A stretch of 63,460 bases of DNA, filler included, from Reticulomyxa filosa (GCA_000512085.1; 22 parts of 22 records of this genome joined end to end with filler, not necessarily neighbours in it); one strand, 5' to 3'; counted from the first letter of the whole stretch, positions 39,867-43,979 are shown. Numbers and translations: made by a program. Notes: generated by a model not told the origin, from the sequence alone.

Positions 39867-42800
39867 CTTTGCTGTTCAAAGATAACGTATTTGAAGAGTT
39901 TCAAGCAGTGATAAAGCAGCGCTTGCTATTGGTTTTGTCGATTGGACTGGTCAATGAGCCCATTGCACATATCATTCTTCAGCGCGCAAAAAAAAGAAAA
40001 AACGGAGGAGAAAAACAGATTTGCGAGGGATCGTTCTTTGAACATTACAAATATACCATTGACAAATTGGTAACAATGGGTCTGATCAACATTTTGCTGG
40101 CATGTTATGAAAACTGTTATTTCCAAGCCTGTTTCAACGGATTTGAACAGCAAATGACCGAATTAGATCACATTTTTGTCAGTTGCGCAAAGAGCTTTTC
40201 GCTATTGCAAATTGAGGAAATCAAGCAGGTCGTATCGCGACTTGCCGAAGACACGATCGAACTCCACGTGGTGCCAATGAAATACACAGCCCAATTTCCG
40301 TTCAGTCATTTGCTTCATCGCTTGTGTCAAAAGCAACTGGTCGATCAAATTGTGAACAATCCAAAAATCATGGCATTGGATGAAACCATTAAAATAGAGG
40401 ATGTTAAAACGGAAGAAATTAAAATGGAGGAAAAAAAGACAGAGGAAATCAAGACGGAAGACAAGAGTCAGTCGATTACAAAAGCAGGTGACAAAAGTAC
40501 AAAAGCAATGCAAAGTGCAAAGTTACTGACAATTGTACTTGCAGAATTTTCCTCATTGAATGACTGCAGTGAAGAAACTTGTCAAATGTATGTGACGGAC
40601 GTGATCATGGAAACGTTTTCCATTCCAATCAACGTGGTATCACTACTCAAAGACATCATCCTTTGCATTACCTGCACTGTGTGTGGCTCCATATCTTTGG
40701 CCAACTGCGAGACTGTGTTGTATTTCTATGGCGATGCTGTCATGCAATATATCACAATTTTTTCCCTGATCAAGGAAGCAGATGTAAGTCAATCTCGAAT
40801 TTCTGTCGAAAAAACCCTGTCTCCATTTGATCGCTTGGCACGAATTACGAATGACTTGTGTCAGTATTTTTCTAATATTAATATTGGTATGAAAGTTTTT
40901 AAGACAGTACAACTTTCTCTCCGTCTATTACATATATAAAAAAAAATAGATGAGTTTATTCTCGTGATGCATCGATTGTGTGTGGCTATGACGCCGATCA
41001 TTTCTTTGATGTTTGAATTTTCCACGAAACACAAAAGTAGAGAAGTGGAACAATTGCTGTCTCAATGTCGGGCCATCGAAGTGCGTCGCTTATGTATGGC
41101 TCATTTTGGACTTGCGGCTTTCTCAACCGAAACCAAAGACATTGGAGGGCAAATTCATTCCTTGTCCTCCATTGGATTACTATCCAGCGATGAAGTTATT
41201 CCAAGCATTCTTAAAGCAGCTGAGAGCAGTGGGCTGTTGAAACAAAACAAATATCCACATTTCATTCACGATTTGCTGGCAATTGCCAAAAAAGTGGAGA
41301 ATATGAACAATGAAAAGGAACAACAAGCATACAAATCTGTAGTCACAAAGCTATTCTTTGACACAGAAAAGCTGACGGCAACAACATCAAATGGAATTGC
41401 AATGGTGAAGTTGCAACGATTGGAGGAAATGGCTAGAAACCAATGGATAGACAAGATGATGGATTTGGATAGCTCAGAGGCTTTGCTGTTGAATCGCGTA
41501 TTGGAACGGATTTACTTAGATTCAACAACTACTGTCGACTTGAATGTCAATATGCTCAAAAATAACAGAGTCATCGAAAAGATCTCCAAACTCAAAGCAC
41601 TTTTGACCAAACATACTTATTGGATTGCCGCAAATGTGGATTTGATGAATTTCGAAGGAAACAATGAATTATTTAAGAGACTTGATGAATGTGTATCCCT
41701 TTTGTCGCAATTTGCCAATGAAGACAAAAAGTTAGAGTACAGTTTACACATTTGGTTTTTGAAACAATTGTACCAATTGAAGGGCATGGACTGGACTCAA
41801 GCACTGATCACACACAAACATATTCGATCAACATTCCCAATCTTTGAAAAAGACGAATTGAGTGCGGTTTTCTCGAAACTTGATTTTTGCGATCCACTTC
41901 TTTGCTCCTTTGATCCATTTATTAGGATGTATGGTAACATCTACAGTAAATTTCGAAAGCAAATTTTTTCAAGTTTGAAAAATGATAATATTGACATTGA
42001 TTACAATGACAAGCAAAATTTCACACCGTTGTTAGTGGCCGCATCGTCAATTGTCGGGTGGTCTGCAACAAAATTTGATAAAACTTCTCTAAGCAGTTGA
42101 TATTACTATATTTATGCAAAATACATATATGTGTATATCTTGACTTAAGAGATGTTTGTAAATATGATTAGAACTGCAAGCCTGCGTATTGGGATATAAT
42201 GTTTTCAACAACAATGTGGAGCGGAGCTTTTGGATAGCCCTCACTTCTCCACAGCCCACGCCATGGCATCAATCCACCATGAAGAGTCCCACTCACTCTG
42301 TTATTGGCAAGCTGTGCCTTCATTTTCTGGGAATACAACAAACTATGAAAAGTTAATAAATTAGGATTTCTTTTCACAAGCAATTGGCTCTCAAAAAAAA
42401 AAATAATAATAAAATATTTTTAAAAATAAGTTCATTCTCATATTAAAAAAAGATAATCCATTCAAAATGCTAATGCTCAGACCAGAAATATTTTTGAATG
42501 GCTATATCCCAAGTATGCCCGAAGACTCATGGTCCAAGATCCGCCGGGTCTTAGCCAAATCAGATGGGAATTCGTTCACCGTCCTTTGGTGCAAGAACGG
42601 CCATCCATTTTTTGTTGGTGAATGTGGACATCCAATGGAACAAGTGGTTTGTGTGACAGATGGTTGTGGCGAAGTTGTAGGCTCTTTGACGCACAGCCAA
42701 AAGGACATAGGACTCCAAATGAAAGATATTCTTCAAGGGTATAAACAAAATAATTGTTAAAAAAAACAACAAAAAATTGCTTTATACTTAATACTCACTG

Positions 42801-43979
42801 CTTTTTGAACAGATATCAATTGGATGGTTCACCGGAAGAACATTCAAAACCGGACGAGTTTTATAGATACGAAGGATGGAATTTGATTCGTCAGCTAAGT
42901 AGAATTACGTGCACGCTATTGCGTTTTTTGATACATTTGCCATTGCTTTTGCGAGACTTTGGCATTGCCGAGGGTTGTGCCCATCTCCAAAAATTGCTAA
43001 ACAAAGGCAACAAACAAGAAGTGACAAACTTTTTATGGAAGCAGGCGACAGGCAATTTTAATTTGTTATGTCGAGGTACCAGACTCAATGAAGAGCAATT
43101 GGCCATTGCATTACACTTCTTCTTGGACGATTTTGGCAAATGGTTCAATGACACTTATCCAAAAGGGTTATTTAATGAGAAGATGCGAAAGAAATTTATG
43201 CACTTGAAATGAACATGGATACACAGTATGGAGAATTTTTCGGCGAAAAAAAAATGGAATGAAATTCGAATGCAAGTAAAAGCAAAGCCGAAAGTGAAAG
43301 GAAAAAGAACTGCAATTTGAAATCCAAGAAAAAAAAGATATTTGATGCATCTTTCGCTCCAAATCTGTTTTTGACAACCAGATTCATGACTTGGGAAGAC
43401 TTGGCTCAGAGTCTGAACAACAACAGAGCACTGAAAAACAAGCATCCATTGTTATCTTTGATGTTATCTCCGACGAATTGCTTTGGAGTGTGAAATATTT
43501 GTCTTGGATTGGACAATGGCTAAAACGTGTCTATGTACGCTTTTGTCTTAAAATTTCCTCGACTGAGGGATGCAATAAGACAATCAAAGATGTATTGGAT
43601 GCCCTTGATGACAACAGAGAAAAATCACGTCAAATATGGTCACATTTCAAAATGTGTTGGAACAGCTTTGCAAAAAAACCCGTTCAAAATGGATGTCAAC
43701 AGTTGGTGGTCCCAGAATTAGGTGATGAAAATGCAATCACAATGGAATGTAGTCTGGCACGTGAAACGGGAATGGGATTGTTTGTTGTCAAAATTGTTCA
43801 ACTTTTGCAAGATGCCAATAACAAATTCTTGCAAGATTGTCATGATCAATTGGATAAAAAGGATTTGGAGATTCCAGAAGGAAAAGACAATGAAGATAAC
43901 AAAGAAATTGAGGAAATGAGTGATAATGGAACAAGTAGTGATGAGGGGTTGAGTGATAATGGAACAAGTAGTGATGAGG
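39867..43979 (+). CDS. RNF213 (mysterin)-like E3 module with RZ-type zinc finger, internal partial
   Basis: QFPFS; NPFKMLMLRPE..GYIPSMPED; CKNGHPFFVGECGHPMEQVVC....CGEVVG; RQLSRITCTLLRFLIHLPLLL; FKMCWN; LARETGMGLFVVKIVQLLQDANNKFL. These are colinear with recalled RNF213 motifs VPFSW, FLPTMPED, CPNGHPCSVGECGRPMEQSIC, LLIRLLTHLALLL and LPRRRGLGLCATALVSYLIRLHNE. Several GT-AG introns. Confidence 0.85.
43918..43979 (+). repeat. 33-bp coding tandem repeat (SDNGTSSDEGL) at contig end
   Basis: GAGTGATAATGGAACAAGTAGTGATGAGGGGTT followed by a second copy cut by the spacer. Confidence 0.9.

What the first reader, a model, noticed from the sequence alone, without database searches (positions are those of the whole stretch)
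39867..43979. RNF213-like E3 with intact RZ finger but no visible RING in a protist
Seen: the RZ-type motif C-K-N-G-H-x6-C-G-H-P-M-E-x3-C-x4-C at 42590-42694, plus colinear RNF213 E3-core and C-terminal motifs on both sides. No C3HC4 pattern appears between the PFS motif (~40297) and the RZ finger, where the mammalian RING lies. Known: the mammalian RNF213 RZ finger drives RING-independent ubiquitylation of bacterial LPS. Inference: this protist may encode an RZ-only, cell-autonomous antibacterial ubiquitylation system, with the RING being a lineage-specific addition or loss. The introns show the gene is eukaryotic rather than a bacterial contaminant.
Basis: partly seen in the sequence, partly recalled or inferred. 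Interest (0 to 1): 0.8.

Follow-up and report, generated by a model that had tools for sequence, protein, structure and literature searches.

The report
RING-less RNF213 homologue in a foraminiferan
This piece is the C-terminal part of one of at least 30 Reticulomyxa filosa relatives of the human immune ubiquitin ligase RNF213; its catalytic RZ zinc finger is intact and no RING domain is detectable, but the copy may be broken and its function is untested.

Summary
All six functional Cys/His residues are kept, with a two-residue insertion in the last zinc knuckle.

The gene belongs to the foraminiferan Reticulomyxa filosa. It has four short GT..AG introns and at least 34 divergent paralogue clusters, all from that species.

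Family membership rests on two results.
- The stretch from about 60 residues before the RZ to about 330 after it aligns with animal RNF213 (hhalign 98.8%, E 9e-17).
- A full-length paralogue locus has an RNF213-type AAA core upstream (E 2.5e-66).

The 2.2 kb upstream of the RZ exon (exons 1 and 2) gave no significant profile or fold match to RNF213.

No RING was found by Pfam or pattern search in the piece, in 38 paralogue proteins, or in any frame of the 19-kb paralogue locus. An unrelated metagenomic AAA+RZ gene also lacks one.

This copy has five frame breaks at 43185-43470, all in homopolymer runs. They are either assembly errors or a pseudogene. An antibacterial role is inference only.

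The parts
39867..40886 (+). Exon 1, cut by the piece's 5' edge; reading frame from 39869, 339 codons. Helical region standing where RNF213 has its E3-back domain. A family-invariant FPFS motif lies at 40295-40306. A disordered K/E-rich linker lies at about 40361-40510, with a 15-nt imperfect repeat at 40388-40433.
   Evidence: No RNF213 match by phmmer or profile. Foldseek to human RNF213 9jw1 gave only E 5.3, TMq 0.49.
40887..40949 (+). Intron 1, 63 nt, GTATGA..TAG, in phase, carrying one stop codon.
   Evidence: Paralogue P0004 aligns across it with a 21-codon gap.
40950..42095 (+). Exon 2, 382 codons, all-helical. It occupies the place of the RING and E3-shell of animal RNF213. No Cys/His cluster.
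   Evidence: AF2 pLDDT 84. No RNF213 match. No RING.
42096..42171 (+). Intron 2, 76 nt, GTTGAT..AG.
   Evidence: Frame change needed to follow P0009 and P0011.
42172..42351 (+). Exon 3, 60 codons. Its 3' end (the LCLHFLG stretch) is where detectable homology to RNF213 begins.
42352..42452 (+). Intron 3, 101 nt, GTTAAT..AG.
42453..42738 (+). Exon 4. It holds the IPSMPED motif at the start of the helix preceding the finger (42506-42526) and the RZ finger (42590-42694). Zn ligands: Cys 42590, His 42602, Cys 42650, Cys 42665. Predicted nucleophile: Cys 42623. Predicted general base: His 42692.
   Evidence: Residue roles are taken from human RNF213 in PMC11549300.
42739..42812 (+). Intron 4, 74 nt, GTATAA..CAG.
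42813..43184 (+). Exon 5, the first part of the C-terminal domain (LLRFLIHLPLL and LNEEQLAIALH motifs), homologous to RNF213.
43185..43475 (+). Continuation of the C-terminal domain, broken by five frame changes. These are six 1-nt indels relative to the close paralogue L003, all in A or T runs.
43476..43979 (+). C-terminal domain continued in one frame, cut by the piece's 3' edge about 350 codons before the end seen in paralogue P0009. A perfect 33-nt tandem duplication lies at 43917-43979.

Best explanation
The piece is the C-terminal third, cut at both ends, of one member of a large Reticulomyxa filosa family of RNF213 homologues. These are giant proteins with a dynein-like AAA+ core, then a fast-evolving helical region, an RZ finger and a conserved C-terminal domain. 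The family has no RING.

Inferred mechanism, by analogy with human RNF213: ubiquitin passes from a cysteine-reactive E2 to the RZ nucleophile Cys (42623-42625). His 42692-42694 acts as general base, and the finger is held by a zinc bound to Cys/His/Cys/Cys. Ubiquitin then goes to the substrate, under the control of the AAA core encoded upstream of this piece.

Shown here: the RZ finger with all six residues, homology of the RZ and C-terminal domain, the RNF213-type AAA core in a paralogue, and absence of a detectable RING.

Inferred only: catalysis, the E2 used, the substrates and any immune role. It is also unknown whether this copy is intact.
For: - RZ finger: Pfam E 2.7e-12; RNF213-only PDB hits, E 1.7e-10, including the pre-finger helix.
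- All six functional positions are kept (against PMC11549300).
- The R. filosa RZ-to-C-terminus profile, which includes the window's exons, aligns with profile A4 at hhalign 98.8%, E 9e-17, 376 columns. A4 itself hits mouse RNF213 over about 1000 residues at E 5e-129.
- The window is colinear with paralogues P0009, P0010 and P0011.
- P0010 lies on a 19-kb contig between an AAA ORF and an RZ gene. That AAA ORF matches RNF213 AAA3-AAA4 at E 2.5e-66, against 2e-18 for midasin.
- No RING.
- dN/dS against the closest paralogue contigs is 0.10-0.42.
Against: - Exons 1 and 2 (721 codons) show no significant similarity to RNF213's E3-back, RING or E3-shell by phmmer, profile HMM, hhalign or Foldseek.
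- The AAA core is shown for a paralogue that is 29% identical, not for this contig.
- There are five frame breaks at 43185-43470.
- The last zinc knuckle has CxxxxC instead of CxxC.
Confidence: 0.75

Rival explanations
1. This copy is a decaying pseudogene of the family. The frame breaks are real, so it encodes no working ligase, although its intact paralogues may.
For: - There are five frame changes within about 290 nt, seen as six 1-nt indels relative to L003.
- The family is very large, and such families usually carry dead copies.
- dN/dS is about 1 in the last 65 aligned codons, though this rests on only 6 changes.
Against: - Every indel sits in an A or T run.
- All are clustered in one short stretch, while about 3.3 kb of the remaining coding sequence is open. 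That pattern fits homopolymer miscalls in a thin part of a draft assembly.
- The sister contig L003 also breaks at the same long A run.
- dN/dS is 0.10-0.42 elsewhere.
Confidence: 0.35
2. A cryptic E2-docking domain stands in for the RING. It could be a degenerate RING, U-box or Miz-like fold without the usual Cys/His pattern, hidden in exons 1-2 or in the parts beyond the contig edges. In that case the protein is not truly RZ-only.
For: - ZNFX1's second ligase domain (Miz-like) went unnoticed until structures were solved (bioRxiv 10.1101/2025.10.14.682297).
- Exons 1-2 have no assigned fold.
- The piece is cut at both ends.
Against: - The AF2 models of exons 1 and 2 are all-helical, with no strand predicted (DSSP lines).
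- No RING-like pattern, even with Cys/His interchangeable, occurs in six frames of the piece or of the 19-kb L001 locus.
- Paralogues that reach the C-terminus have none.
Confidence: 0.12
3. It is an unrelated lineage-specific helical protein that merely acquired an RZ finger, and not an RNF213 family member.
For: There is no profile or fold match for the 721 codons upstream of the RZ exon.
Against: - Homology runs about 330 residues beyond the finger into the RNF213 C-terminal domain.
- Paralogue loci carry an RNF213-specific AAA core in the same orientation. The estimated spacing to the RZ is about 1400 residues, against about 1600 in human.
Confidence: 0.03

Closest known systems
Human/mouse RNF213 (mysterin); PDB 6TAX, 7OIK, 8S24, 9JW1
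   Same: - RZ finger with the same Zn ligands, nucleophile Cys and general-base His.
- The LPxMPED helix before the finger.
- Homologous C-terminal domain.
- In paralogues, the same two-Walker-A AAA core (GETGCGKT and GKPGxSK) at about the same distance upstream.
   Different: - No RING.
- The region between the AAA core and the RZ is unalignable and, by estimate, about 200 residues shorter.
- CxxxxC instead of CxxC in the last zinc knuckle.
- At least 30 paralogue lineages instead of one gene, some with a catalytically degenerate RZ.
ZNFX1
   Same: It carries the only other known type of RZ finger, also with a Cys/His catalytic pair. RZ fingers of ZNFX1 are reported back to choanoflagellates.
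   Different: ZNFX1 has an SF1 helicase, NFX1 zinc fingers and a Miz-like domain. None is present here or in the paralogues, which instead have an AAA core and the RNF213 C-terminal domain.
P0041 / locus L002 (JGI metagenome 3300048856, organism unknown, GC about 0.62, intron-free)
   Same: A giant gene with an RNF213-type AAA core (34% identical to the R. filosa core, E 4e-92), an RZ finger and a C-terminal domain, with no RING.
   Different: - Only about 20% identical to the R. filosa proteins.
- Its E3-shell half still aligns with animal RNF213 (569 columns), unlike the R. filosa one.
- Tyr stands where the second Zn ligand (His) is expected.

Membership tests
RNF213 | RZ finger with four Zn ligands plus a nucleophile Cys and a general-base His | tested here: met
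   Pfam PF20173 E 2.7e-12. PDB RNF213 E 1.7e-10. Residue-by-residue match, with a 2-residue insertion before the fourth ligand.
RNF213 | Helix with the LPxMPED motif directly before the finger | tested here: met
   IPSMPED at 42506-42526 aligns to LPTMPED of human RNF213. It is kept in all R. filosa paralogues with an intact finger and lost in the degenerate ones.
RNF213 | C-terminal domain downstream of the RZ | tested here: met
   hhalign A2 against A4: 98.8%, E 9e-17, 376 columns. BLASTP of P0009 against P0042: E 7e-20 over 405 residues. A4 is RNF213 at E 5e-129.
RNF213 | Dynein-like AAA+ core with two active modules upstream in the same protein | not testable with these tools
   The contig ends before it. 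It is met in paralogue locus L001: E 2.5e-66 to RNF213 residues 2431-2949 (construct numbering), both Walker A motifs present.
RNF213 | C3HC4 RING about 470-510 residues upstream of the RZ | tested here: not met
   No Pfam RING at E <= 1. No strict or loose pattern in six frames. None in 38 paralogues or in the whole L001 locus. The positive control worked: the RING was found in A4 members at 328-368 and 201-246.
RNF213 | E3-back and E3-shell helical domains between the AAA core and the RZ | tested here: inconclusive
   No profile match. Foldseek: exon 2 has no RNF213 row among the 50 shown; exon 1 against 9jw1 gave E 5.3, TMq 0.49. VIA-align skips chains over 3000 residues, so it could not test RNF213.
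ZNFX1 | SF1 helicase and NFX1-type zinc fingers N-terminal to a C-terminal RZ | tested here: not met
   No such Pfam domains in the piece or in long paralogues. The upstream ATPase in L001 is an AAA of the RNF213 type.

The most novel reading that the evidence does not exclude
An AAA+ core with an RZ finger and no RING may be the ancestral RNF213 architecture, older than animals, with the RING added later on the animal line. The foraminiferan would then have expanded this machine into a repertoire of at least 30 genes, resembling an innate-immune repertoire, in which whole clades keep the zinc scaffold but have lost the catalytic Cys/His and the ubiquitin-binding helix. Those members could be sensors, decoys or regulators.
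Probability: 0.3. Interest if true: 0.7.

Novelty: new variant of a known kind. Interest (0 to 1): 0.5.

Why it matters
In human cells the RZ finger, not the RING, ubiquitylates bacteria, and no substrate of the RING is known (PMC11549300). A natural RNF213 lineage that keeps the AAA core, RZ finger and C-terminal domain but has no RING would be independent evolutionary support that these three parts form the working ligase.

It would also place this giant immune E3 well outside animals, in Rhizaria. The large expansion, with catalytically degenerate clades, is the pattern seen in conflict-driven gene families. It offers natural variants for dissecting what the RZ finger needs in order to work.

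These proteins already sit in public databases as 'RZ-type domain-containing protein' or 'ring finger protein'. I found no paper linking RNF213 to Reticulomyxa.

Tried and rejected
- Single-sequence PDB searches of exons 1, 2, 5 and the tail found nothing.
- Family profiles A1, A2 and A3 against the PDB found nothing. A2 probably failed because degenerate paralogues dilute the finger.
- hhalign of A1 and A3 against P0042, A4 and P0041 gave probabilities under 1.2%. The 'FPFS' match to P0042 (E 0.045, 22 columns) is not conserved in A4, and I treat it as chance.
- The ESM Atlas by features and by shape returned only generic helical-repeat rows.
- VIA-align searches gave only generic helices. 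One search revealed that chains over 3000 residues are not aligned, so these say nothing about RNF213.
- Two metagenome scans for further relatives found none.
- Rfam found nothing.
- Minus-strand ORFs are short and have no support.
- The exons were never joined. All searches were made exon by exon or with database paralogues.

Full report
**What is there**

The piece 39867-43979 (GC 0.38) carries one + strand gene that runs off both edges. I read the gene model from the three-frame translation and checked it against paralogue proteins by tblastn.

| Part | Coordinates | Notes |
|---|---|---|
| Exon 1 | to 40886 | cut at the 5' edge |
| Intron 1 | 40887-40949 | 63 nt |
| Exon 2 | 40950-42095 | |
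| Intron 2 | 42096-42171 | 76 nt |
| Exon 3 | 42172-42351 | |
| Intron 3 | 42352-42452 | 101 nt |
| Exon 4 | 42453-42738 | holds the RZ finger |
| Intron 4 | 42739-42812 | 74 nt |
| Exon 5 | from 42813 | |

All four introns are GT..AG. Every search used single exons by reference or database paralogues.

**The observation**

The RZ motif is at 42590-42694, as reported. Pfam ZnF_RZ-type scores 46.6 bits against a cut-off of 27, E 2.7e-12. The only significant PDB matches of exon 4 are RNF213 chains (E 1.7e-10). That alignment begins about 40 residues before the finger, at the LPxMPED helix.

Against the residue roles published for human RNF213 (PMC11549300), all six positions are kept:

| Role | Human residue | Window position |
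|---|---|---|
| Zn ligand | C4505 | Cys 42590 |
| Zn ligand | H4509 | His 42602 |
| Nucleophile | C4516 | Cys 42623 |
| Zn ligand | C4525 | Cys 42650 |
| Zn ligand | C4528 | Cys 42665 |
| General base | H4537 | His 42692 |

The one difference is CxxxxC instead of CxxC between the last two ligands. All R. filosa paralogues with an intact finger share this.

**Organism and family**

An exhaustive HMMER search with exon 2 found 34 clusters (representatives at 50% identity). The ten looked up are all R. filosa, and nothing else in 1.8 billion proteins matched. This is therefore a large, divergent, lineage-specific expansion.

A tree of this region gives four clades.
- The window groups with P0007 and P0009, which has an intact RZ.
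- A second clade (P0010, P0011, P0039) also has an intact RZ.
- Two well-supported clades (100/100 and 100/99) keep the four zinc ligands but have lost the LPxMPED helix, the CGHP nucleophile and the final His.

**Is it RNF213?**

Two independent results say the family is.

First, the contig of paralogue P0010 (L001, 19 kb) carries consecutive same-strand gene calls of 1873, 784, 178, 1046, 586 and 152 residues. The 784-residue call has AAA hits, the 1046-residue call is P0010, and the 586-residue call has the RZ. This is evidently one giant gene split by annotation. Its AAA ORF matches RNF213 residues 2431-2949 (construct numbering) at E 2.5e-66, with both Walker A motifs. Midasin scores only 2e-18.

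Second, P0009 finds non-foraminiferal relatives. Thirteen metagenomic RING+RZ proteins form alignment A4, which hits mouse RNF213 over about 1000 residues at E 5e-129. These are probably animal, since each is a single large exon on a gene-poor contig. The R. filosa RZ-to-C-terminus profile A2, which includes window exons 4, 5 and the tail, aligns with A4 at hhalign probability 98.8%, E 9e-17, over 376 columns. In window terms this covers about 42300 to about 43700.

**What is not shown**

Exons 1 and 2 (721 codons) sit where animal RNF213 has E3-back, RING and E3-shell. They gave no significant match to RNF213 or to A4 by any of these methods:
- phmmer;
- family profiles;
- hhalign;
- Foldseek with AF2 models: exon 2 at pLDDT 84 and exon 1 at pLDDT 68.

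The only hint is exon 1 against human RNF213 9jw1. It has the highest TM-score in that list (0.49 by query) but E 5.3, so it is a lead and not evidence.

The VIA-align searches cannot count against homology, because chains over 3000 residues are not aligned.

**The RING**

By residue counting from the RZ, or from the AAA core, a RING would fall at about 40400-41300. None was found in any of these tests:
- no Pfam RING family at E <= 1;
- no strict or relaxed cross-brace pattern in six frames of the piece or in 38 paralogue proteins;
- none in long paralogues with 700-1000 residues upstream of the exon-2 equivalent;
- none by Pfam in the ORFs between the AAA core and the RZ (plus the ORF after it), or by pattern in any frame of the complete L001 locus.

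The methods do find the RING in A4 members, 467 residues before their RZ. The AF2 models of both exons are all-helical. The AAA-to-RZ interval in L001 is about 1400 residues by my estimate (from the coordinates), against about 1600 in human.

A second, unrelated RING-less case exists. L002 is a GC-rich, intron-free metagenomic gene. Its AAA core is 34% identical to the R. filosa core (E 4e-92), and it has an RZ finger and a C-terminal domain. This is compatible with the RING being a later addition, but without taxonomy and a rooted tree, gain and loss cannot be told apart.

**State of this copy**

Between about 43185 and 43470 the reading frame changes five times. Against the closest paralogue contig L003 (89% identical there) the window shows six 1-nt indels, all in A or T runs. 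L003 itself breaks at the same long A run. The clustering and the homopolymer context point to assembly errors in a thinly covered stretch, but a pseudogene is not excluded.

dN/dS against L003 and L004 is 0.10-0.42 over exons 1, 2, 4 and 5, so the lineage has been under constraint.

**Mechanism**

Inferred from human RNF213 and ZNFX1: a transthiolating E3 in which the pre-finger helix binds ubiquitin, the E2 hands ubiquitin to the RZ cysteine, and the histidine assists transfer to the substrate, all gated by the AAA core. Nothing here tests activity, E2 choice, substrates or an antibacterial role.

**Verdict**

This is a genuine RNF213 homologue fragment with an intact RZ finger, from a family that lacks a detectable RING. 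It is a new variant of a known kind. It is of moderate interest for the evolution and minimal architecture of RNF213. The weak points are the undetectable upstream homology, the draft-quality and possibly broken copy, and the lack of any functional data.

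Noticed in passing
Paralogues P0017, P0018, P0023, P0027, P0028, P0030 (R. filosa): Two well-supported clades of the family keep the four zinc ligands of the RZ finger. They have lost the LPxMPED helix, the CGHP nucleophile cysteine and the final histidine, so they are probably catalytically dead.
   Followed up: partly
L002:1644-13256 (JGI metagenome 3300048856, contig Ga0496066_002011): An intron-free, GC-rich (0.62) RNF213-like gene made of 1916 and 1954 codons in the same frame, separated by a single TGA. 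It has an AAA core and an RZ finger, no RING, and Tyr where the second zinc ligand is expected. The organism is unknown.
   Followed up: partly
window 39867-43678 against L004 and L003: Synonymous divergence from the closest paralogue contigs is mosaic along the gene: dS 0.09, 0.20, 0.38, 0.50, then 0.03. This suggests gene conversion between paralogues or a chimeric assembly of repeats. L004 ends and L003 begins at the same point (window 41370/41374).
   Followed up: partly
window 43917-43979: A perfect 33-nt tandem duplication (1.9 copies) coding an acidic Ser-rich stretch, lying exactly at the contig edge. Paralogues have variable linkers here.
   Followed up: no
L003:1880-1900 (ASPP01004930.1): The sister contig has its own frame break at the same long A run as the window, consistent with systematic homopolymer miscalls in this assembly.
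   Followed up: partly
L001:17125-17829: A separate gene with a weak zf-TRAF hit lies just downstream of the giant RNF213-like gene.
   Followed up: no
Tool behaviour: VIA-align leaves out chains over 3000 residues. Giant proteins such as RNF213 therefore cannot appear in pdb_via (stated) and probably not in pdb_via_wide either, so a blank there is not evidence against similarity to them.
   Followed up: yes
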